A model generated the notes under the pieces. The model worked only from the letters and a program-made list of their open reading frames with translations. It was not told the origin of the DNA and ran no database searches. Positions 9,291 through 21,896 of a DNA stretch of 64,000 nt are shown here, piece after piece (position 1 is the stretch's first letter; every line of letters starts with the position of its first letter). The position numbers and the translations under genes are program-made. Source of the stretch: Perkinsela sp. CCAP 1560/9 (taxonomy: Eukaryota > Protista > Euglenozoa: Kinetoplastea); contig CBFFSA010000009.1 in the NCBI GenBank assembly GCA_965644495.1, positions 558,001 to 622,000 of the forward strand. Reading direction: 5' to 3'.

Positions 9291-9635
9291 GGATGGAAGA
9301 ATAACAAAGTGTCTTTGGATTCTTTTTTTACTTCAGGGCTCAGAGTGTAAAGAATTTCAGGCGAATTGTTTTTCAAATATTTTCCAATATGTTTCACATT
9401 GACATTAAACCCGCGGGCTAGTTACCTTATCGCAACCCCGTGGCCAAGCCTCATGCGCCATAACACTTTTCCACTTTCTGTAAGACCACCCCTGGGGAGT
9501 CGATACGTATTTGTTGGCATGAAAAGTGATTTTTTTTAAAAAATACATTCAACTTTTTTATATTTTTCGAAATGACCTAAAGACAACGGGAACGTACAGA
9601 TCTCAAAATTTTGCACGATAAAGTGGTGCGATAAC

Positions 9636-9652
9636 GTTTCTGTACCTTGTTG
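9636..9652 (+). other. Spliced-leader exon 3' relic
   Basis: GTTTCTGTACCTTGTTG, identical to 18615-18631; resembles the kinetoplastid SL 3' half GTTTCTGTAC....TTG; followed by a 34-nt UTR and ATG, with no GT donor. Confidence 0.8.
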
Positions 9653-9686
9653 ACTTTTTTTTCTTTTCCCTACCCTTTACAACGAC

Positions 9687-11595
9687 ATGTTTTGCTTACT
9701 ACTAGGGAAGGGCACACACCAGGCGTCGCAGGACTCTCCTAAGAGACCACGCGACGTGTCTAACCAAAACAAAAACCTGTCCCTGAAAGGCACTCTCACA
9801 GACAGGGTTGCAAAATCTGCTACCCGAACCGTCCAGGCTCTCATATCCCAAAAGAGCAATGAGTCCCTTACCAGCGACACAGGAGAAGTACCCCCAGCTC
9901 CATGCAAACATCCTTGTAAGGACAAAAGCACCTGCGGACACCCCTGTTGCAAGCGGGGTGTAACGCGGCCACATATCCTGGTCACTCCTCACACAAACGA
10001 ACTTCCCCCTCACCCCGTCCCCCCAACCACACAACAAACGGTTCCGGAATGCAAACACCGCTGCAAGGACAAAGCTCACTGTGAACACCCATGCTGCAAA
10101 CGACACCTGGTACGCGTAGCAAAACCGGATACGTACAACAATAAGTGATGTGACGCACCGGTGGATGCAAGAGAAGACGTAAAGGTGATCACGGCTGTGA
10201 GTGTAATGCCGGTACAACGTAGCACACCCTGTAAGCATGTCTGTAAAAACAAACAGACCTGCGGGCACCCATGTTGCAAACGTAATCTAACGGCACTCCC
10301 TCAACCCCGGCGGTAACCGTACGACCTCACAGCAGCACCGGACAGGAACGCTTGTCGTACACAATAGCACCCTGTCCAAAAGACGAACACGATTTACATG
10401 TACCCCCACCCAAGGAGGTTACTCCCCATCAAAAATCACCCACTGTTACCGTCGGTGGTGCCGTCGCATCAACTGCCTGCTCGCTTGCCAAATTCCTACT
10501 TTTCAACGGCGTTCCATATCAAACTCCGGAAATTAATAAAACTCCGGACTCCCAAAGCCTCCCCAAACCTAAATCTCCAACACAACTTCAGGTCCACGCC
10601 TTAACTAGAGTATGCAAGCATATCTGCAAGAGTAAAGATCAATATAAGCACGTGTGCTGCAAGCAAGGCCTAGGCCCCGCTTCCGAACAAGCAGACCGTG
10701 TCGAGCCCTGTAAACATAAATGTAAGAACAAAGCAGGGTGCGGCCATCCTTGCTGCAAACGCACTGGCACACCGTTGACTTCGCTTGACACACCGATAAG
10801 CAAACTGGATGGGCAGAATACTCTACCCACCGGCCCATGTACCCTTCCCAAGAATTTCGTCACACCGTCCCTAAACACAACCACTACGACAGCTGACCGT
10901 GCCGTTGCCAGGGAACCAGCCATCCCGACTCCCAAAAACAAGGCACCGGAAAGTATCATTCTCTTGGACTCATCTTCCACAGCACACCAACACAGTCCGC
11001 GGAATGAGAATGGCGATGACGAAGTCCCATCCTGGGTTTTCCAACAAGCGCACAGCGTAGGGCGAATACAAAGCCCGCCGCTTGAACAAGGAAGCCTCTT
11101 ACCCCCATCACAACTGGACACCCATTTACATTCGGATGAATCCGAGGGTACCAAGATTCCCACACAAACTCCCGACAGCCCGTCACAGTATCTCCCGCCG
11201 CCCCAGGACCCCACGCATCCCGTAACCCATAACCGACACAAGCAACGTTTCCACTTTATCCAGTCCCGGTCAAAACCTGTCAAACTCCACCTCGTCAACG
11301 ACAACACATGGAGATATTTCCCGGATGTGCATGCAGCTTGCGTAAGCCAACTTGTGCGTAGTCGTATCCCTTCCCCCCAGGGGGCTGAAGCCGCCCTGTC
11401 CAAAGCGCTCAATGGGAAAAGTGCAGCACACGACATCGTCGTAGAAACGTGTACCGTAGACGAACTTATGGAAAAGAGAGCGTGTGACTTTTTAGAAGTT
11501 AGTAGAGTAGACTCAACAAGTCACATTTCTCGCCACGCGAACTGGGTATCTCTTTTTCACGACAGCCGCCTGGAATTATACAACCACTACGCATC
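9687..11595 (+). pseudogene. LINE ORF N-terminal part with five CxHxCKxKxxCxHxCCK motifs
   Basis: In-frame TGA at 10146 and a stop/frameshift near 10314-10352; joins 14582 in frame (NHYAS|PSSMGK). Confidence 0.8.
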
Positions 11596-12523
11596 CCCGG
11601 ATGTTCAACTCCAGTGCACCACCCCATTGTCAACTCCAGCGCACCACTTTTTTCACCATAGTCGACCGTCATTCCCTTTTTCTGCGCCTCACCATAGTTG
11701 AACATCGTTCCTTTTTCCTTTCAACATAAAAACTTATCCAGAGTATTTAAAGAAAGCGTAATACAAGTGTAAGATCTGAGTAAGAAACTTTATTAGACAA
11801 GAATTTCTTCACCTTTACAAAATGCTTAAATTTATTGTCATTAAATTTCCAACACTAGCAGGCTAACTTTACAAGCTTTCTCACGTACCTTTGCTTACTT
11901 AGCTTCTTTTACTTACGCAGTTCATTCACAAAATCCATTGGAGAACGATAATTTAATAATTTCCGAGGACGAGTGTTCAATTCCAATGCTGTTTTGTTTA
12001 ATTCACTTTGGTTCAAATTCTCAAAAGATTCGGTTTTCTGATGGAATTGTCGGATCAAACCGTTTGCATGTTCCACAGACCCTTTCTCCCACGAATGATA
12101 CGGAGCGCAAAAGAAAGACTTGCATTTCAATTTTTTGTTTACTTCTTCATGGTGCCTCCGTGTCTGCTCCGTTGTCGTATGTGATTGTTTGAACCTTGTA
12201 ATTCTTTAACCCGTCTTCAATTTGTTTGTTTACCCCCTTCGCGTGCTTAGATTCCAACTTGCGAAGAACAAGGAAGCGACTCTTACGCTCGCACAGGGTA
12301 AGAATATATCCGGTATGTCCTCGACCCTCGACCAAGTCTGCTTCCCAATCGCCGTAGCGCCGACGCTTATTAACAATTTCTGGTCGATTTTCAAGTGGCG
12401 TTCGGTTGGGAATCGCGCTGCGATCAGGTCTGGTGCGACGACGGTATGGCCTCTTTCGCTGGATCCGCAAATGGGTGTACAACTTGCCGCCTAAGGACGC
12501 GTTGCGACGAATATGGCGATATA

Positions 12524-14079
12524 CAGGGGTGCAAATCAGATGCTGGGGGGTCTAAAATTAACAATGTTTGCGCAATTTTGGAAAATAATAGCGCATTCGA
12601 GAGCTCTCGCAGAGATCTATGTATTTGGATAGGCGGTTTCCCGGGGTGTAAGGGGGTGGTCAACTGAGGAGAAGCCCAAAAACGTCAAAATGCAAAAAGT
12701 GAAAGAAAAATTTTGTACGTTCAATAATTACAACTTTCCCCTTTTTTTTCTACTACTATGTCGAAACGCCGCGGCATGCTGTTTAAAGTATTTATGAGCA
12801 TGTCATGACCATCTGTTTTAATGTAATCAAACGCCTTTTCAATAGAATACAAAACTTCAGTCCTATTTTCTGGGTTTGTACCATCTTTAATAAAGGTGTC
12901 CATGATGTCCCAAATGTTTTCAATAGGGTTAAGATCTGGGGATTTTGGGGGAAAGTCTAAAACAAAGACTTGGTTTTCTCGAAAGGTTTTAAAGGTGCCA
13001 TTGTGACAAGGAGCATTATTCATTGCAACTCTAGTACCGCTATGACGCTTCAAGTAACTTAAGAAACCCCCCCTTTTTGTCATAGCTGCTTTAAAAACAT
13101 TTGAAGTAATTGTAACTTTCCCATTTCTGACCCTGTCGGGAAAGACGTGATAAAAAACTCCATAAATAAGGCTTATACCCATCCAAACGTTTACTCCATC
13201 CCCCCCAAACCATTTTTGCGCAGCTTTTAGGGGTGGCTTGGGGGGGTCACTCGCTCGGCAAATGTAAGAACGGCTTTCGCGCCCAAGTTGACAAGTAAAC
13301 TTTTTTTCGTCACACCAAATAATGTGACGAAGCTGTGCGACGGACCACTTCTGCATTTTCAGTGCAAATGTTAGTCGCTTGGCCTTGTGAACTTCAGTTA
13401 AGAACAGGCCTTTAGAAAAAAATCGTTGGATCATCCCTTCGTCCTTCAAAAAATTTACTAGGGCCGGCCTGCTGCAGGAGAAACCCCTTTTCCTAACCTC
13501 TCGAAGAATAAAACTCCACGAGGGACAACCTCGCGCACTTGTCGCGTTGGACGCGTCAATAATTTCGCGGCATGCCTCAAGAAGCTCCGGCGTTGTCAGT
13601 GCGTTCGCGAGGAGGCGTAGCACGTTCAACATCCCCGGTTTCCTCAAATCGCTTAACCCACAACTTAACAGTGCTGTCGTGGACGCCTTGTCTTTGGCAA
13701 GTGGCATTGTAGGAGTTTGTATTCTCGTAATCTTTAACGAGAAGCATCCTGTGTGAATATTTTGTGTGCCCCCGGGGTTCGTGTGATCTATCAGATAAGC
13801 TTTTACTGTTTTGCTTAGAGAGGGATCGCTTTTGCGGCATTATAGTGAGCTGAAAAACAAAAAAAAACACGGAAAAAACTGCAAAAATTGAAAAATCTGC
13901 AACTTTTAGGGGGGTAAAAAACCTTTAAAAAAATATCTTTTTCAAATTTGTTTTCTTTTAACGTGATAATAGCGCCAAAACATAGATCTCTGCGAGAGCT
14001 CTCGAATGATCTATTATTTTCCAAAATTGCGCAAACATTGCTAATTTTAGACCCCCCCAGCATCTGATTTGCACCCCTG
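12524..14079 (-). mobile_element. Tc1/mariner element, layer 5
   Basis: ~100-bp TIRs CAGGGGTGCAAATCAGATGCTGGGGGG...; TA TSD at 12522-12523 and 14080-14081. Confidence 0.95.
12721..13840 (-). pseudogene. Tc1-like transposase, frameshifted, second catalytic D changed to N
   Basis: HTH STVKLWVKRFEETGDV in one frame; WCDEKKF, MNNAPCH and FPPKSPDLNPIENIW in another. Confidence 0.9.
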
Positions 14080-14581
14080 TATGGTAGAAGTCGAGGCGGT
14101 ACGACAGCTACGGATCGTATTTGCAATCTGTTCCGGGCTGTGCTTCTTTTGAAGTCGAGAGCTGACTTCCTCTTCCAAAAGGCCTTGTATCTTGTGAGGC
14201 TTGACCTTTTTACACGAGAGGCGTCTTTTCGAAATGCGCTGTGCCCTCGTCCCCTCATAGCGCTGACCCCTTCTTGCATTACGCGCCAACTCGCGACAAA
14301 CAGTGCTGTGACTTTTGCCAATTATGCGAGCTATGCTTCGCCGACTCTCGCCAGATGTAAAGAGTGATTGAATACGATTACGATCGTAATGACTGAGTCT
14401 TGAATAATGGCGCATTTGTAGTGTAGATCCGAAGGATATTATAAAATAATACTTCTTTAAATAATTGATGGTGCATTGGAAATGAGAATACAGTTTTTAA
14501 GAAAAAGTGGTGCACTGGAAATGACAAGAAAATTATTTTTTAGGAAAAAAAGTGGTGCGTTGGTGTTGACAATCCGCCATC

Positions 14582-17500
14582 ACCTAGCTCAATGGGTAAA
14601 GCGGTAAATAAGGTACTGAACGGGAGAGCGGTCCCTGGGTTATCGGCGTTTCGGATCGTTCTGCTCCTTCGCACCGACGACAAAGAAGAAGTACAGCCAT
14701 CAAAGCCCCAAACGGTCCCAACACTTCCACCATACGAGATTATTTCGCGTGACCACGCCTCCTCCTTGAAGCGGACGCACCCATGCCAACATCGATGCAT
14801 AAGTCAACTCAAATGCAGCCATCCATGCTGCAAAATCTATGGACCATCCCTCGATCAGGGAATCGAAGGAGACTCTGAGGGGAGCCCCAACGCAGGACAA
14901 GAGCAAGAACACCCCGAACTTAACCCCCCCACTTCCGCTTCCTCTCCGAGACCACTCGACGAGACGGAGTACCTTTTCCGCACGGCACGATACATCCAGG
15001 GGGGCAAGTTAAACATAAACTTGGCTGACGCGCACTGGCACGAGGTGGAACGTAGGGCCCTCCACAGATGCAACACCTTGCTCACTGTCTCTGGCGACGC
15101 ACTCCCCGCCGTCCATAACGCAGAACTACTGAGTGCAATACTAGCGGTGTCGGCATATGAAGTGGCGCGAGACGTCGACTCCAGGAAGGGTTTCATTATC
15201 CGAACGGCTCGAGGACACACAAAGGGGAAAGTCCGTCCATTAGAAAGCGAAAAAGTTGCCTTTTCCTTCTCTCGACATGTAAAACAACTACAAATGAAGC
15301 TGCGATACACACACGGCAAGGCTCCCCGCATGGCGTTGAAACAAAAGATTAAGGAAACCAAAAAGGCGGAACGTATATACAGCGCAGAAGCCATGGCCCA
15401 AAAACGGGAACTGGAAAGTCGCTGGGCACTTCAACAATTCAACCGCAATCCATGGACGGCTGCGAGTCAAACCTTGGACAAAAGCACAGAAGCAGAAAGT
15501 GTACCGGCCTATCCGACTTGCAATGTACAGAAAGTGGAAAGTGTGTTCACAACATTACTTACGGACCCCACTACAGTGCATCACTTACCACCCCACGACG
15601 TCCTCGGAATCCGTCCTCTGGCAGAAATGACCTGGGACGAACTGGCTTCAATCGACATTTCGAACGCTCTCACATCAAAGAAAAACAGCAGTGCTCCAGG
15701 CCAGGACTCCATTACGTACCAGACTCTAAAGCGATGCCACAGCTCCCACACCCACATGGCAAACGTCTTCAACGCGCTAGTGCGCTTCAGCACATGTCCG
15801 ACGTCGTGGAAAATATCCGTCACTCGCCTCATTTACAAAAAAGGGGAGCCTGACAACCCACAAAGCTGGCGTCCCATCGGCCTGACTAGCGTACTAGGGA
15901 AACTCCTGCATTCCATCATCAGCCGGAAAATGACGAAATTCCTAATTGAAGCCTCTGTCATTGACCCCAAGATACAGAAAGGCTTTCTCCCCGCCATTAA
16001 CGGTACTCTCGAACATACGCAATCCCTCTCAGAGCTCCTACGCCACTACCGGAAGAACAAGTTGAACTACTGCATGGCCGAGCTAGACCTCAGTAACGCC
16101 TTTGGTTCAGTCCCCCGCAACATCATCTTTGAAGCACTGGAATGGGCGAGAATCTCCCCAAACATTATTAAATACGTCCAATGTTTATACACTGACGCAA
16201 GTACCCGCATTAAATGTTACGAAGGTCTGTCCAGCGCGATCCCAGCTAAACGAGGTGTCTTACAAGGTGACACTCTCTCTCCTACGCTCTTTCTGGTGAT
16301 TATGGATCTAGCCCTACGTTACATGGCAAAATCGTTTCCCTCATTTGGATTGAACCTCCCTGGATTTCCAAAAAGCTTCCTAAAAGCGTACGCCGACGAT
16401 CTCACGGTCCTGACGAATAGTGAAAAAGAAATGCAACTGGCTGTTGAAACACTATCCACGGTACTCGGTTCGCTTGGCCTTTCCATCAACGTCAAAAAGT
16501 GCAGAGTCCAATATATGGCGTCCAAGAAAAATGATGAACACCCCGGCTACATGACACGACGTCCTCAAATTTTCATCAAGAACGAAGCTATACCGCATAT
16601 ATGCGACGAAGGAAGTACGTTTCTTGGCATGAATATTGCCCCCGGTTCTCAACAATCCCGAGCCCTTTTCACGAAAGTTAGGCCCTTATTGAAGCGATGG
16701 CTTCATAACATTGACCAGTCGGCCCACGACCTCCCATCAAAAATTTGGATATATCAGCACGCAATCATCTCTCGGCTACGCTTCACCTTTACTATACACC
16801 CATGTATCACGCTAAACTTTATTTTACGCCTTCAGAAAATGTGTACTCACTCCCTGAAACGGTGGATCAATGCGGCTAGAACTACATGCAGCGAAGCAAT
16901 CTACTCTCAGCGTGGATGGAACATCTGCAGCTTGTCCAGACTCTGGGAAGACTGTACAGCTGATCTTCTCTGTCAAATGAAGCGGTCCCGAGACCCGAAC
17001 GTTACCGCCGCACTGCAGGAAAGAATACGGGCTGAAGAACATAAGCGCAGGAAAGGCCAAATTCGACCAGCATGTGACATCACACACATACTGGAGGATC
17101 GCGACCTCGCAAAACGAACTCTTCTTGAGCTTAATGAGGACCGAATGATCAACGCACTACGCCGCAGGTCAACGTTCGCTATTCAGTGGTGGGATATAAC
17201 CTCCGAGGAAGAACAGGCGAAAGATTTCAGCGCCGCGATAAACGGATTACGTAGCACTTCCCTTAGCCGCTTCGCAACTTCTTTAATGGTACAAAACACT
17301 CTCCCTAATAGGACAATGCTGAGGACATGGGGAATTCACGGCACAGATACAGTACAATTCCGAATTTGTAAACAAGAACCGGAAACATTACGACACCTCT
17401 TATCCTCGTGCAAGGTATCACTAGAACAGGGACGTTGCACATATCGCCATGATAGTGTACTCTCCACCTTTGCAAACGCGATACTCTCTTCCCCCCATAC

Positions 17501-17921
17501 CGCAGAGGCACATTTTGATCTCCCACACCTACGTCAACTACCCGCATGGTGGTCCGACCTGGAAACACAGCTTCGCCCAGATGGAATCGTCAAACTCAAC
17601 GACGGAACTGAATTTATCGTTGAGTTGACGATGCCCTGGGAGGAAAACGTACACGAAGCCCACTGCCGAAAAGTAGAAAAGTACATAAATATTCTACACC
17701 GACGAAAAATAAGGTACTCAGACTGCCACTTGATATGCTTTGAAGTTGGAGCTAGAGGTCTCCCTTCTACGACGCTGCGTCACATCAACCGTCTCTTTTT
17801 GGGTGACAAGGCACTCTCAGATAAGTGCCGTGTCGAAGTCATCCGAACGGCGATCCGGAGCAGCTTTCAACTCTGGCTGAAAAGGGAATCCCCTTTATGG
17901 GACAACCAAAGCTTTGGTTAG
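14582..17921 (+). CDS. LINE ORF: reverse transcriptase, zinc knuckle, restriction-like endonuclease
   Basis: SAPGQD, WRPIGL, QKGFL, LDLSNAFGSV, GVLQGDTLSP, YADD; ICKQEPETLRHLLSSC...QGRCTYRHDSVL; LRPD...VELTMPWE...KVEKY. Confidence 0.95.
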
Positions 17922-18164
17922 CAAATGGTCTAGCAGGCGACGTCATATGCGTACGTCCTGTTAGACTTTATTACTCTACAGGTAATGCCCTGTATAGATA
18001 TAATTCCCCTAGCCCCCCTCGTGCGAAAAATAAGGGTGGGTGCCTTTTTTGATGCGGAGGGGTTTAATAGATGGTTGTTAATAATAGACGAACTCCCCCT
18101 TTAGAAAATTTAAACCGCTGGAATCACTTTTCATGATAAAGTAACTCTGTACTCCGTGAGAGAG

Positions 18165-18262
18165 CTCGAAACCCACATGGCACCAGTATTTAATGATGTG
18201 CTCAAATTAGGCGATTGCCCTTCAACGTGGAAGACTGCTGTGACTCAGCTGATACAGAAAGG
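18165..18262 (+). pseudogene. Older RT fragment of a related LINE
   Basis: LETHMAPVFNDVLKLGDCPSTWKTAVTQLIQKG versus HTHMANVFNALVRFSTCPTSWKISVTRLIYKKG in the LINE. Confidence 0.75.
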
Positions 18263-18608
18263 ATCTGTTTGTGTCTTCTCCATATAGTATGCATTTTGCA
18301 CGATGGACACAGTAGACGTGGAACATAGTAGAAATCATCGATGGTTGCACTGCTACCAAGCGCTCATTGATAACATAGTGTCCGAGCTGAAGCTAAAACA
18401 TGTCACTGTAGTGCACAGTTCCCGCTGTTTTTAGGTCTTTTGAGAATAAGAATAGAAAAACAAATAATGCATGGGATCATGTCCAACTCCCTACCTCCCA
18501 CCATGAGGGAGCTGCTCACTGGGGCGTCCCTCAAACTCTTTACCAAGCCGGGCGCCCCGGTTGGGCACCATTCCTCTTACCAATGCTTCCTAAAGGTTGC
18601 GGGATAAA

Positions 18609-18631
18609 GATACAGTTTCTGTACCTTGTTG
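18609..18631 (+). other. Spliced-leader exon 3' relic
   Basis: GATACAGTTTCTGTACCTTGTTG; GATACAGTTTCTGTAC matches the trypanosomatid SL core. Confidence 0.85.
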
Positions 18632-19061
18632 GTACATTTTCCCTAGCTCATCCTTTCTTTTCCCGGAAACGGGCATACTCTTAACCTTTCATGTGTGTCC
18701 GTTTCCGACTGGCGCTAGGGCCGGAAACTCTTCTTTCCGTTGAAGAGGGGCCGCCGCTTCGCACACCCGTGCAGCGGGTCAGACGCGCCGAGTGCCCCCG
18801 CTGGATGGACGCCAGGGAGAGCCTCTCAACGACGCTGCGTAGCCGAAAGGCTTCTTGCAGCCTCTCAACGACGCCCCCCGCAGTGGAAGTCCAGTGCCCC
18901 CTTCACCCCCCCATGTGCTGCAGGACCTCCCTGGAGGACCACGCGGCGTGGCCATAGGCCGAATCCCTGCGTACGACCGGCGTTGAATGCGCTGTAATGG
19001 CCGTTGATAACAGTCGTCGTACGTCAGGCGCTCACTCTTCAGGTTTTGCCCCGCATGAAAT
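18609..19061 (+). mobile_element. SL-headed SINE-like non-autonomous retroelement
   Basis: Starts with SL-like 23-mer; 3' end resembles the LINE 3' end; ATAAA TSD at 18604-18608 and 19062-19066. Confidence 0.72.
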
Positions 19062-20222
19062 ATAAATAAATACTGGAGAAGGTGAGAGAAAACCTACCCT
19101 CCTACTTTCAAGGCATTCAATTTGGGGCGCAGTACACCCAAGGGTGCGAACACATAATCTACAGTGTTCGTCAACACTTTAGGGACAGACCGGGCGAGGT
19201 CACAGTGGCAGCCGACCTCGAGAATGCCTTCAACAGCATCTCGAGGTCGGCCATCTTCAGGGCCCTAAAGGGAGACTCCAAGCTACTCCCCCTTGAAGGT
19301 ATCAACCTCTTCGGCTACGGGAAGCCTAGCACCCTACACCTTGGGGAAGGAATCTCCATAATGAGCTCCAGGGGGGGTAAAACAAGGGGACCCCATGGCC
19401 CCAATCCTATTCGCCATAGGAATCCAAGGGGACATAGCCAAGGTGGCGGCTAAGTTCCCAGGCTCCCTCAAAATATGGGCTTACCTTGACGATGTCACCT
19501 TCGCGGGTGAACCAAAGGTATGTGGGGCGGCTCTGGAGGTTCTTGAGAGGGAAATCAAGCACCTTGGGCTTAACACGGGGTAAACTATAGTGGCCACCCG
19601 CCAACACAGCCTCTACTCAGAGTTCTCCGGAAACAGAATGGTTCACTCCCATGGACAGACATTCCCCCAAACAAAATAAACATTACTGGTGATTTTGCTC
19701 TATTATTTTGTTTTGCTCTATTATTTGTAGGAACCCCGATTGGTTCGGCAAACCACTGCAGCGCTTTTCTCCACACGAATGCGTTACTCCATCTATCGAT
19801 ATCTACATTGCGGACAATAAAGAGAATCGAGGACCCACAAGTCGCGTTGACACTGCTGTCTCTTTCATAAATAATTATATCTGAAAAAGCTCCTAAAAAT
19901 GAGAAAATGAAGACTTTTTTCGATCACTCATTTCCCATCACCGCGAGAACAAATATTGGATGGGGGACAATTCTGGTACGTGGGTCGCTGAAGTTCAAGG
20001 TGATTTTATCGCTTTTTTGGCGTAATATAGAATTTCCATATCGAATATGGAAATGAATATTAGCCATCGTAAACGGATATTATCAAACTGATAATCTCTG
20101 TAGAATCTTTTCATCATCTCAGCATGAAAAGCGCTACAATTTTACAAAATCGGCGACGTTTTACGAACCTTAAATTCGTACACCCCGTGAATACAAGTGT
20201 AAATCGGTTTTTTGAACCTCCG

Positions 20223-20912: not shown

Positions 20913-21896
20913 GGATGAAAGGGGTTAGAAAATAGGGCGCAGAAATAGAGGTTGCAAATAAATAGAACGGATGCGTAAGAATGACTGCTCAAAATAATCT
21001 TCCATCAGATGCGTTCGAATGTTACTGCATATTACTTTATTTTTACTTGTACCAAGTAGAACCAAACTAAAACTGATAAAATGATTCAAAAAGCTGTGTT
21101 TCATCGTCGCGTAGCTCACAACAGTCCTCACCGACAAACTAACATCAGGTTCCATCAACAGACGACCCCTCAATGTACTCCAAGACGCAACCCTTAAAGA
21201 ATTGCTTTCAAATATCCTTCTCCCAGGGGTCTCCCAAGATAATGTACAGACCCATATCATCGATATTGGGACAAAAGTCTAGCAGGTAAAAAGTAGTCGC
21301 GAAAGGAAAATAAAGGTGGATTCGTGCGCTTCAGGACAGAGAGAACCCCGGAAAAATATTTTGAATCAGGTCGCAGTCCCCGAACGTTGTATACAGTCTC
21401 GTGAAAACCAGATTTTGTACAAAAGAAATGAAATTTTTGGTTTTCAGTATTTTGATAGCCCCGTGACTTTGCTCATCAAGAAATTTCAGAAAACAATCAG
21501 AAAAATGTGCAAAGTCAGGGGGAAACTTGTAAAAAGTATGAACTTGTAAAAGTGTGAACTTTTTAAAGCGTAAGCATGAACTGAAAAAGGACTTTGATAA
21601 AATACGTTACTGATTTGATTTCAACCTTTTTAATCAGATATTATATGCCAAACGCGGGGTGGATATTATGCTAAGACAATTCTGGTGAACTTAAACATAA
21701 GAAAGTCAAATCTATGTGTGTAATTGTACATGCCCGATAAGTCCTCGTTACCTTCCAAGTTCAGTATACGTACGTTTGAAAATTTAAACGTGCCTGAAAA
21801 TCTGTTCCATTCCAAATGCAGATTTTCCAGCGATCGTGGAAGCAACGCAGTCTCCACTTCACCGCGCAGCTCGTTCTTGGAAAGGTCCAACTTTGT

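What the first reader, a model, noticed from the sequence alone, without database searches (positions are those of the whole stretch)
9631..19066. Spliced-leader-headed LINE/SINE pair with shared 3' tail and ATAA target
Seen: the LINE (9635-17999) and the 453-bp element (18609-19061) carry the same GTTTCTGTACCTTGTTG at their 5' ends. Identity stops exactly at the TTG where a kinetoplastid SL exon ends. Their 3' ends align (ACTCTACAGGTAATGCCCTGTATAGAT|ATAA versus ACTCTTCAGGTTTTGCCCCGCATGAAAT|ATAA), each with CGTACGTC just upstream. Both are flanked by ATAA(A) duplications. Known: kinetoplastid mRNAs are SL trans-spliced, and SINEs borrow LINE machinery through shared 3' tails. Inference: this is a retrotransposon system that copies trans-spliced RNA, so full-length inserts carry an SL relic. 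The relic's own AG, or the pyrimidine tract that follows it (TTTTCCCTAG in the short element), could provide a new splice acceptor in each generation. This differs from CRE/SLACS, which insert into SL genes.
Basis: partly seen in the sequence, partly recalled or inferred. Interest (0 to 1): 0.9.

Follow-up and report, generated by a model that had tools for sequence, protein, structure and literature searches.

The report
Spliced-leader-headed LINE and SINE family

Summary
The shared 17-mer is real. It is the last 17 nt of this organism's spliced-leader (SL) exon. In the SL RNA gene (L004) it is followed by GTATGAG, the start of the SL intron.

The long element is an R2-like non-LTR retrotransposon. 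It carries a reverse transcriptase and a C-terminal restriction-like endonuclease. This copy is dead and holds two nested DNA transposons. The short element is one of at least 83 SL-headed SINEs.

Empty sites show that the SL relic arrived with the inserted DNA. Seven LINE families in all, and every SINE subfamily, share two features:
- an SL relic head;
- a 3' module of CTCT, a hairpin whose stem covaries, ATGA (ATAGA in the window LINE), and an A/T-rich end.

The genome holds 540 copies of the 17-mer, and only 6 lie in SL RNA genes. Tandem relics (11 loci) and SINEs re-spliced at their internal TTTTCCCTAG acceptor (16 loci) point to repeated rounds of trans-splicing and retroposition, as in dinoflagellates.

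The ATAA duplication is refuted. The 3' ATAA belongs to the element. The 5' ATAA belongs to the host repeat (LINE) or to the SL relic itself (SINE).

No RNA data were available. How the 5' ends at SL nt 22 (LINE) and nt 10-13 (SINE) are set is unknown.

Two unverified first-reader notes (s1-682828, s1-673020) reported SL-headed elements elsewhere in this genome.

The parts
9560..9635 (.). Left half of the ~140-bp MITE-like host repeat into which the LINE inserted. It ends in GCGATAAC.
   Evidence: At least 40 other copies are uninterrupted.
9636..9652 (+). SL relic heading the LINE, equal to SL exon nt 22-38.
   Evidence: Exact match to the end of the SL exon in the SL RNA gene L004. It is absent from empty sites of the host repeat.
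9653..9686 (+). T-rich 5' UTR of the LINE, up to the ATG at 9687.
   Evidence: Conserved in all 5 full-length copies, with a T-run of variable length.
9687..11594 (+). N-terminal part of the LINE ORF, with repeated Cys/His motifs (CKHxCKxKxxCxHPCCK). In this copy it is broken: the first stop is at codon 154, and frameshifts and a ~209-bp deletion follow.
   Evidence: Translation. The same region is open for 604 codons in copies L062-L064. No Pfam hit.
11595..14578 (.). Nested insertion that is not part of the LINE. TIR element X occupies 11595-12523 and 14080-14578. It is itself split by TIR element Y at 12521-14082.
   Evidence: The pieces are contiguous elsewhere in the genome. The whole insertion is absent from the allelic contig L100.
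14579..17921 (+). C-terminal part of the LINE ORF (ATG-to-stop ORF of 1109 aa at 14592-17921). The reverse transcriptase is at about 15837-16535. The CCHC motif and PD..D..K restriction-like endonuclease are at about 17295-17762.
   Evidence: Pfam RVT_1, E 9e-30. The best solved relatives are R2 proteins 9nl3, 9dou and 8gh6, and the alignment runs into the endonuclease domain.
17922..18005 (+). LINE 3' UTR. It holds a long hairpin at 17930-17964 (containing CGTACGTC at 17950-17957), then CTCT at 17974-17977, a terminal hairpin ACAGG/CCTGT at 17978-17993, and the tail ATAGATATAA(TT) at 17994-18005.
   Evidence: Fold z-score -3.56. Identical in 6 copies. The module is conserved with a covarying stem in other LINE and SINE families.
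18006..18070 (.). Right half of the host MITE-like repeat (CCCCTAGCCCCCC...).
   Evidence: Contigs of DNA runs join GCGATAACC directly to position 18006.
18603..18631 (+). SL relic heading the SINE, equal to SL nt 10/11-38.
   Evidence: Matches the SL exon. The same head, starting at nt 6-18 (mostly 10-13), is present in all SINE copies examined.
18632..18646 (+). GTACATTTTCCCTAG. The GTAC pairs with the SL's GTACC, giving a hairpin like SL RNA stem-loop I. TTTTCCCTAG is a pyrimidine tract plus AG that has served as a trans-splice acceptor in other copies.
   Evidence: Fold of the head, z -4.75. 16 loci join the SL end directly to the base after this AG (L035).
18647..19034 (+). Non-coding body of the SINE (subfamily A/B). 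It contains a 15-bp hairpin at about 18664-18707 and CGTACGTC at 19018-19025.
   Evidence: About 8 near-full copies at 82-95% identity. No tRNA, 5S or other Rfam match in L031.
19035..19072 (+). SINE 3' module: CTCT, a hairpin TCAGG/CCCGC that is degraded in this copy, ATGAAATATAA, and the extension ATAAATA.
   Evidence: Aligns to the LINE tail. Copy L038 has a perfect stem GCAGG/CCTGC.

Best explanation
The 8.4-kb element is a dead copy of a dispersed non-LTR retrotransposon of the R2-like architecture. It has one long ORF with N-terminal Cys-rich repeats, a reverse transcriptase and a C-terminal restriction-like endonuclease. It lives in a deep-branching kinetoplastid. Transcripts of this LINE clade, like other mRNAs of the cell, receive the 38-nt spliced leader by trans-splicing. 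Target-primed reverse transcription starts at a 3' module (CTCT, hairpin, ATGA or ATAGA, A/T-rich end) and can run into the leader. New copies therefore begin with an SL relic that ends exactly at the splice junction.

The 0.46-kb element is a non-autonomous SINE. It carries the same kind of 3' module, and its subfamily A tail is closest to this LINE's tail. It is therefore most likely copied by the LINE's enzyme. It too starts with an SL relic.

Relic-bearing copies are transcribed again and can be re-spliced at an AG inside the relic or at the SINE's TTTTCCCTAG. This gives tandem relics and shortened heads. Integration makes no ATAA duplication. The outcome varies from a small target deletion to a 6-12-bp duplication.

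Shown here: the anatomy, the copy numbers, the empty sites, the covarying hairpin and the re-splicing footprints.

Inferred: trans-splicing of the element RNAs, recognition of the tail by the RT, and the way the 5' ends at nt 22 and nt 10-13 are set.
For: SL identity: the SL RNA gene repeat reads exon then GTATGAG.

The relic is part of the insert:
- The host repeat's empty sites lack it.
- An allelic contig (L100, 99% identical) lacks and gains elements. A 0.58-kb SL-headed SINE-C is present in L100 and absent at window ~21815-21820. Its relic lies inside the inserted DNA, 5-6 bp of target are lost, and there is no ATAA.

Generality:
- The 17-mer occurs 540 times, 6 of them in SL genes. 232 relics run from nt 3, and 83 have SINE heads.
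- The longest relics start at C3, never at A1 or A2, as expected if the RT stops at the modified cap.
- Seven further LINE loci have SL heads joined at G38 to different UTRs 23-46 nt before the ATG: L096-L099, L101, L002 and L084, at 45-50% aa identity for those compared.

Re-splicing footprints: (L035).

Enzyme: RVT_1 plus an R2-like endonuclease. The ORF is open in three copies that are 97-99% identical.

Tail: a significant LINE/SINE alignment. The stem covaries across 12 tails, with A-T, T-A, C-G and G-C at the third pair.
Against: - No RNA data. The only candidate RNA run held nothing, so SL on element transcripts is inferred, not seen.
- The window LINE family never has more than SL nt 21/22-38. 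Starts are 22, 22, 21/22, 23 and 29. All 5 copies of its 5' UTR carry the relic, so no relic-less source locus exists in the assembly.
- Re-adding the SL in register would need a TG acceptor rather than AG. The relic may therefore now be inherited rather than renewed.
- SINE heads start at nt 6-18, mostly 10-13, and never at nt 3.
- The SINE's first bases after the SL (GTA) match the SL intron. This leaves an SL-RNA origin possible.
Confidence: 0.75

Rival explanations
1. Fossil-head variant. The SL relic was acquired once by trans-splicing and 5' truncation, and is now simply part of the element. Element RNAs would begin at relic nt 22 (LINE) or nt ~11 (SINE) through an internal promoter or an RNA-processing site. 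They would not need a new SL in each cycle.
For: - 5' ends are tightly clustered within families: the LINE at 22 +/- 1 in 4 of 5 copies, the SINEs mostly at 10-13 in 28 copies.
- No relic-less master locus exists.
- No AG lies in register.
- There is precedent in kinetoplastids. The Pr77 internal promoter of L1Tc/ingi gives unspliced transcripts that start at +1 (PMC1874656, PMC8190864).
- The SINE head is strongly structured (z -4.75).
Against: - Relic length differs between close relatives: L096 starts at nt 11, L002 of the same family at nt 21, and L084 at nt 26.
- The same two hot spots (about nt 11 and about nt 22) recur in unrelated families. This argues for a mechanism acting on a longer SL rather than for inheritance.
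- No ribozyme was found by Rfam, and the LINE 5' end is not unusually structured (z -0.8).
Confidence: 0.35
2. Chimeric retrocopy. The RT reaches the 5' end of an uncapped element RNA and jumps onto a free SL exon (the first-step trans-splicing intermediate) or onto SL RNA. This would add the SL piece without the element RNA ever being trans-spliced.
For: - R2-type RTs are known for end-to-end template jumping (established knowledge).
- 5 of 41 hairpin tails are followed at once by another element's head.
- Partial head copies lie upstream of full heads in L052, L099, L055, L033 and L016.
- The SINE has GTA after the SL, as SL RNA does.
Against: - A jump onto SL RNA should bring in its intron, but beyond GTA there is no similarity (alignment z about 1).
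- Junctions in all other families fall exactly at G38.
- The re-splicing footprints at AG sites are what the spliceosome would make, not what an RT would make.
Confidence: 0.1
3. CRE/SLACS-like origin. The elements are, or recently were, inserted in SL RNA genes, and the SL piece is co-transcribed or transduced target sequence rather than a splicing product.
For: - The enzyme has the same architecture as CRE/SLACS/CZAR, the only RLE-bearing LINEs known in kinetoplastids (PMC12278014).
- SINE heads start at about nt 11, next to the classical CRE insertion point between nt 11 and 12 (that site per PMC5814959).
- SINE-C copies in L049 and L052 are flanked by duplications made of SL nt 16-24/25.
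Against: - None of the 5 LINE copies, nor the SINEs examined, lies in an SL gene.
- The SL piece is at the 5' end of the element and ends at the exon border. A CRE-type insertion would instead leave nt 12-38 plus intron at the 3' side.
- The empty site has no SL sequence.
Confidence: 0.05

Closest known systems
Relic DinoSL retrogenes of dinoflagellates (mRNA recycling; PMC6050394, PMC5585692)
   Same: DNA copies of trans-spliced RNAs carry the SL at their 5' end. Re-transcription and re-splicing at an AG inside the relic give truncated tandem relics.
   Different: Here the carriers are mainly retrotransposons and their SINEs rather than cellular retrogenes. The host is a kinetoplastid, and relic lengths cluster at set positions.
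CRE clade: SLACS, CZAR, CRE1, CRE2 (PMC12278014, PMC5814959)
   Same: Kinetoplastid non-LTR elements with an RT plus a restriction-like endonuclease and N-terminal zinc-finger-like motifs, and an intimate link with the SL sequence.
   Different: CRE elements sit inside SL RNA genes at a fixed site and end in poly(A). This family is dispersed, carries the SL as its own 5' head, and ends in a hairpin plus an A/T-rich or microsatellite tail.
R2 retrotransposons (solved structures 9nl3, 9dou, 8gh6)
   Same: Best sequence match. The domain order RT - linker - CCHC - PD..D..K endonuclease is the same. A structured 3' UTR is presumably read by the RT. Target duplications are variable or absent.
   Different: There is no 28S rDNA specificity, the N-terminal DNA-binding part is different, and no 5' ribozyme was detected.
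L1Tc/NARTc and ingi/RIME pairs with the Pr77 head (PMC1874656, PMC8190864)
   Same: A kinetoplastid LINE and a short non-autonomous partner share a short 5' signature.
   Different: Pr77 is an internal promoter that gives unspliced transcripts. Those LINEs use an APE endonuclease and poly(A) tails. Here the shared 5' signature is the SL itself.
Stringent LINE/SINE pairs sharing a 3' stem-loop, such as UnaL2/UnaSINE1 (from general knowledge, not checked here)
   Same: The SINE borrows the LINE's RT through a conserved terminal hairpin and short terminal repeats.
   Different: The SINE head is not derived from tRNA, 5S or 7SL and has no Pol III promoter.
SL trans-spliced transposon transcripts in Hydra (PMC12220107)
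   Same: TE transcripts use the host's trans-splicing machinery.
   Different: That paper reports SL on RNA reads only, not SL relics fixed at element 5' ends in DNA.

Membership tests
Non-LTR retrotransposon with restriction-like endonuclease (R2-like architecture) | Reverse transcriptase domain of the LINE type | tested here: met
   Pfam RVT_1, E 9.1e-30. R2 proteins are the best PDB hits, E 1.5e-29.
Non-LTR retrotransposon with restriction-like endonuclease (R2-like architecture) | C-terminal CCHC motif followed by a PD-(D/E)xK nuclease, and no N-terminal APE domain | tested here: met
   The alignment to R2 chain 9nl3_A covers query residues 902-1057, with C..C..H..C, PD, D/E and K aligned. 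No Exo_endo_phos hit appears even at E<=1.
Non-LTR retrotransposon with restriction-like endonuclease (R2-like architecture) | Insertion without LTRs, 5' truncation, and variable or absent target duplication | tested here: met
   One 5'-truncated copy at C4:499k. There is no duplication at the window site. SINE target duplications range from 0 to 12 bp, and one insertion deleted 5-6 bp.
CRE clade (SLACS/CZAR/CRE1/CRE2) | Site-specific insertion in the SL RNA gene | tested here: not met
   Five copies lie in unrelated flanks. The 6 SL genes are elsewhere.
CRE clade (SLACS/CZAR/CRE1/CRE2) | Poly(A) 3' end | tested here: not met
   All copies end in a hairpin followed by ATAGATATAA(TT/ATA). Only one of six has an added A-run.
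CRE clade (SLACS/CZAR/CRE1/CRE2) | Phylogenetic grouping of the RT with SLACS/CZAR | not tested
   No named CRE protein appeared among the 17 hits, and no reference sequences were at hand for a tree.
SINE | Short, non-coding, dispersed and multi-copy | tested here: met
   About 0.46-0.58 kb. There are 83 exact heads and 282 candidate loci. One insertion is polymorphic.
SINE | 3' end shared with a partner LINE | tested here: met
   The window LINE tail is the closest of the five LINE tails seen to the subfamily A tail.
SINE | Head derived from a Pol III transcript (tRNA, 7SL, 5S) with an internal promoter | tested here: not met
   No Rfam family matched L031 at E<=0.1. The head is SL nt ~11-38. 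Internal T-runs would stop Pol III.
SL-relic retrocopies (dinoflagellate type) | Relic equals the SL exon and ends exactly at the splice junction, outside SL genes | tested here: met
SL-relic retrocopies (dinoflagellate type) | Tandem truncated relics made by re-splicing at an AG inside the relic | tested here: met
   9 loci have TTG|TTTCTG and 2 loci have TTG|ATACAG.
SL-relic retrocopies (dinoflagellate type) | SL present on the corresponding transcripts | not testable with these tools
   No RNA run holds the region. Run X5 gave no contigs.

The most novel reading that the evidence does not exclude
This LINE clade may be an evolutionary intermediate between the SL-gene-specific CRE/SLACS elements and free-living LINEs. 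On this reading its endonuclease still recognises SL DNA, so the SL heads would be both products of trans-splicing and preferred landing or trimming sites.

That would explain several observations together:
- the recurrent relic starts at about nt 11 and about nt 22;
- the partial heads lying upstream of full heads;
- the target duplications made of SL nt 16-25;
- the frequent tail-to-head SINE dimers.

It would mean that the elements seed their own future targets across the genome.
Probability: 0.2. Interest if true: 0.85.

Novelty: new variant of a known kind. Interest (0 to 1): 0.7.

Why it matters
The retrotransposons described so far in kinetoplastids either sit in SL genes (the CRE clade) or make unspliced RNA from an internal promoter (ingi/L1Tc).

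This is a whole clade of R2-like LINEs, with abundant and still active SINEs, whose DNA copies start with the spliced leader. Eight searches of the held papers found no description of this in kinetoplastids.

It gives a genomic record of trans-splicing and of repeated RNA-to-DNA recycling in Euglenozoa, parallel to the record in dinoflagellates. It marks full-length insertions unambiguously. It offers natural reporters of which acceptor sites the trans-spliceosome uses. It also raises a testable link between SL-targeting endonucleases and SL-carrying elements.

SINEs with an SL head and no Pol III-type head would also be a new way to build a SINE.

Tried and rejected
- ATAA target duplication: rejected by comparing copies and empty sites.
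- SINE as an SL RNA pseudogene: the region after the SL does not resemble the SL intron (score z about 1), and nt 1-9 are missing.
- Ribozyme or known RNA family at the heads: Rfam at E<=0.1 found only a 5S rRNA gene beside the SL gene.
- RNA evidence: the look-up of sequencing runs gave four DNA-like runs and one possible RNA run. The RNA run laid nothing on window 17600-19600. No empty allele of the window SINE was seen there either.
- Relic-less master locus of the LINE: only 5 copies of the 5' UTR exist and all carry the relic.
- A pattern meant to find AG|GTAC source loci of the SINE was badly designed and uninformative.
- Clade assignment by named relatives: one search returned only unnamed ENA proteins, and the protein atlas gave generic RT clusters.
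- The paper of Teng et al. 1995 on CRE2 is not held.
Full-length copies elsewhere in G000 could therefore be compared only by coordinates. ENA contigs fetched with the look-up of encoding contigs filled part of the gap.

Full report
**What is at the coordinates.** The 17-mer GTTTCTGTACCTTGTTG lies at 9636-9652 and at 18615-18631. Chance would give 0.01 matches in the window. The window is contig C9:558001-622000 of a 21.0-Mb genome that holds 540 exact copies of the 17-mer on both strands.

A 297-bp tandem unit on C1 (L004/L005) reads AACTTTAACGATAAAGATACA plus the 17-mer, followed by GTATGAGAAGC. That is a kinetoplastid-type SL RNA gene: a 38-nt exon (L004:1798-1835:-), then the conserved start of the intron. 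A 5S rRNA gene lies beside it. Only 6 of the 540 copies have this intron.

The organism's SUV3 helicase is 56-57% identical to the EukProt transcriptome entries labelled PhM_4 and PhF_6. It is 46-50% identical to Trypanosoma and Bodo proteins. I read these labels as prokinetoplastid isolates from my own knowledge, not from a tool. The host is therefore a deep-branching kinetoplastid.

**The long element.** Five full-length copies exist: the window copy, C4:601557-607132, C10:383718-389298, C11:212593-218181 and C3:1290958-1296520. A sixth copy is 5'-truncated. The copies are 97-99% identical.

The window copy spans 9636-18005. Positions 11595-14578 are foreign: a TIR element X, itself interrupted by a TIR element Y. 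An allelic contig from another assembly (L100, ERZ24900291, 99% identical, same flanking OBG gene) has the LINE at the same site without X and Y.

The 1109-aa ORF at 14592-17921 has RVT_1 (E 9e-30). Its best solved relatives are R2 proteins. The alignment continues through the CCHC motif and the PD..D..K restriction-like endonuclease. No APE domain was found.

The N-terminal part carries six repeats of a Cys/His motif with no Pfam match. It is open for 604 codons in copies L062-L064 but stops at codon 154 in the window. The window copy is therefore a dead member of a family that looks recently active.

**The SL relic came in with the LINE.**
- The LINE's flanks (9560-9635 and 18006-18070) are the two halves of a ~140-bp repeat with at least 40 uninterrupted copies.
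- Those copies read GCGATAACCCCCCTAGCC and contain no SL sequence.
- Contigs of three DNA runs also join GCGATAACC to position 18006.
- The other four full-length copies start with GTTTCTG..., GTTTCTG..., TTTCTG... and TACCTTGTTG... after unrelated flanks.

**The ATAA duplication is not real.** All six 3' ends read ...CCCTGTATAGATATAA followed by TT, TTA or ATA, whatever comes next. This ATAA is the start of the element's own A/T-rich terminus. The 5' ATAA of the window copy is part of the host repeat. The insertion lies between GATAAC and CCCCTAG, with at most one C lost.

For the short element, the 5' ATAAA is SL nt 11-15. The relic starts at 18603/18604, not 18609. A second copy with the same tail (L038) has no ATAA in its flanks.

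**The short element.** About eight near-full copies exist (82-95% identical), with two tail types. The first ~160 nt are shared at about 80% with a much larger set: 282 candidate loci and 83 exact SL-plus-GTAC heads.

One very uniform 0.58-kb subfamily (here called C) was aligned from 14 loci. All subfamilies start inside the SL. Relic starts fall at nt 6-18, mostly 10-13, in 28 copies. None reaches nt 3.

The sequence after the SL does not resemble the SL intron beyond GTA. No tRNA, 5S or other Rfam family matches. The head is strongly structured (z -4.75). It includes a GTACC/GGTAC hairpin that mimics the stem around the 5' splice site of SL RNA.

A subfamily C copy is present in L100 and absent from the window at about 21815-21820. 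The inserted DNA begins with SL nt 12/13 and ends in CATCAAAA(T). Five to six target bases are lost, and there is no duplication. This is direct evidence that SL-headed SINEs are mobile units and were active recently.

**The shared 3' module.** The last 32 nt of the LINE and the SINE align with score 27, against 14.3 +/- 2.3 for shuffles. 2 of 1000 shuffles and 0 of 1959 genomic controls reach this.

Five LINE families (the window family, L096, L097, L098, L101) and five or more SINE tail types all end in the same module:
- CTCT;
- a 3-6-bp hairpin;
- (T/C)ATGA, or ATAGA in the window LINE;
- an A/T-rich or microsatellite end.

The stem changes by paired substitutions. The third pair is A-T, T-A, C-G or G-C, and the fourth is G-C or C-G. 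This indicates a conserved RNA hairpin.

The stem in the window SINE is degraded, while L038 has it intact. Of the LINE tails seen, the window LINE's tail is closest to SINE subfamily A in stem (CAGG), loop (T..TGC) and end (ATATAA).

**Generality of the SL head.** Seven further LINE loci carry an SL relic joined at G38 to a different T-rich UTR, 23-46 nt before the ATG. For those compared, the proteins are 45-50% identical to the window ORF. Relic starts are:

| Locus | Relic start (SL nt) |
|---|---|
| L096 | 11 |
| L002 (same family as L096) | 21 |
| L097 | 13 |
| L098 | ~7 |
| L099 | 11 |
| L101 | 10 |
| L084 | 26 |

Other families, often preceded by the poly(A) of an upstream copy, carry the relic from C3. 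There are 232 such sites genome-wide, including the 6 SL genes. No relic includes A1 or A2. That fits an RT stopping at the hypermodified cap, which is an inference from what is known of kinetoplastid cap 4.

**Footprints of repeated cycles.**
- 9 loci read TACCTTGTTG followed directly by TTTCTGTACCTTGTTG. A new SL is joined just after the AG at relic nt 21-22.
- 2 loci read TACCTTGTTG followed directly by ATACAG..., joined after the AG at nt 15-16.
- 16 loci join the SL end to the base that follows the SINE's internal pyrimidine tract and AG. These read TTCATC (12 loci), CCCTTC (3) and CTCATC (1, which is L035).

These are the products expected if relic-bearing copies are transcribed, trans-spliced at those acceptors and retroposed again. 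The same logic explains relic DinoSL in dinoflagellates (PMC6050394, PMC5585692).

**What remains open.**
- No RNA data were available.
- The window LINE family always starts at nt 21-23 or 29. All five copies of its UTR carry the relic. No AG would let the SL be re-added in register.
- The recurrence of starts near nt 11 and nt 22 in unrelated families argues for a mechanism, not only for inheritance.
- 21 of the 30 copies of the 17-mer that lack an A just upstream (relics starting at G22) have T at that position. Nine of these are tandem relics.
- Partial head copies (nt ~11 to ~21-27) lie just upstream of full heads in L052, L099, L055, L033 and L016.
- 5 of 41 hairpin tails are followed at once by another element's head.
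- The subfamily C copies in L049 and L052 are flanked by duplications made of SL nt 16-24/25.

Either R2-like template jumping or a residual preference of the endonuclease for SL DNA would explain these last three points. I could not separate the two.

**Comparison with what is known.** In architecture the LINE works like R2 and the CRE clade. However, it fails two defining CRE features that were tested: insertion in SL genes and a poly(A) tail. RT phylogeny was not tested.

The LINE/SINE relation works like stringent pairs that share a 3' stem-loop. The SL relics work like dinoflagellate mRNA recycling.

Full-text searches for the SL sequence, and for SL-carrying retroelements in kinetoplastids, found nothing. 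Reviews list only ingi, CRE, VIPER and TATE in trypanosomatids and Bodo (PMC12278014, PMC4728078). In Hydra, TE transcripts are known to be SL trans-spliced at the RNA level (PMC12220107).

Two first-reader notes of this scan (s1-682828, s1-673020) had seen SL-headed elements on other pieces of this genome. They were unverified and agree with what I tested here.

**Verdict.** I rate it a new variant of known kinds, with interest 0.7.

Noticed in passing
window 9560-9635 and 18006-18070; L066-L086: A ~140-bp MITE-like repeat with at least 40 near-identical copies hosts the LINE. Its uninterrupted form reads ...GTGGTGCGATAACCCCCCTAGCC...
   Followed up: partly
window 11595-14578: Two nested TIR DNA transposons lie inside the LINE. 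X (~1.43 kb, at least 8 copies at 97-99%) is split by Y (~1.56 kb, ~108-bp inverted ends, many copies). The allelic contig L100 lacks both, so the insertion is polymorphic.
   Followed up: partly
window ~21815-21820 versus L100:13346-13921: A 0.58-kb SL-headed SINE (subfamily C, minus orientation) is present in the ENA contig and absent in the window. Five to six target bases are replaced and there is no duplication.
   Followed up: yes
L047, L050, L051, L053, L056 (SINE-C flanks): Several subfamily C copies sit at the same position of an LRR-like coding repeat. The flanks translate to ..FEG.VDL..LP upstream and N(E/D)(L/F)SG downstream. This suggests sequence-specific targeting and agrees with note s1-682826.
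   Followed up: no
L052, L099:2715-2760, L055, L033, L016: Partial copies of the SL head (nt ~3/11 to ~21-27), sometimes several in a row, lie directly upstream of complete heads.
   Followed up: partly
L004 (C1:~661.3-661.6 kb), bin 18605-18671: The assembly holds only 6 canonical SL RNA genes. In DNA run X2, however, the summed depth over the bin covering the SL relic and SINE head is about 1450 times single-copy depth. The SL arrays are probably collapsed in the assembly. The SL unit lies next to a 5S rRNA gene.
   Followed up: no
window 18480-18602 and 19073-19453: The SINE splits the remnant of another reverse-transcriptase gene. The flanks translate to ...CFLKVAG and LEKVRENLP...AADLENAFNSISR.
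   Followed up: no
L011, L027 (ORFs after SL heads): Poly(A)-tailed SL-headed families begin with ORFs containing LGSWDQFAANK. This is the motif other first-reader notes called an Ataxin-2 LsmAD-like domain of CRE elements. Other SL-headed units (L024, L025, L083) start with a CxxC...HxxCxxC finger.
   Followed up: no
window 9687-11594; L063:1549-3360: The LINE N-terminus has six repeats of CKHxCKxKxxCxHPCCK(R/Q). No Pfam family matches. It may be a new DNA- or RNA-binding zinc module.
   Followed up: partly
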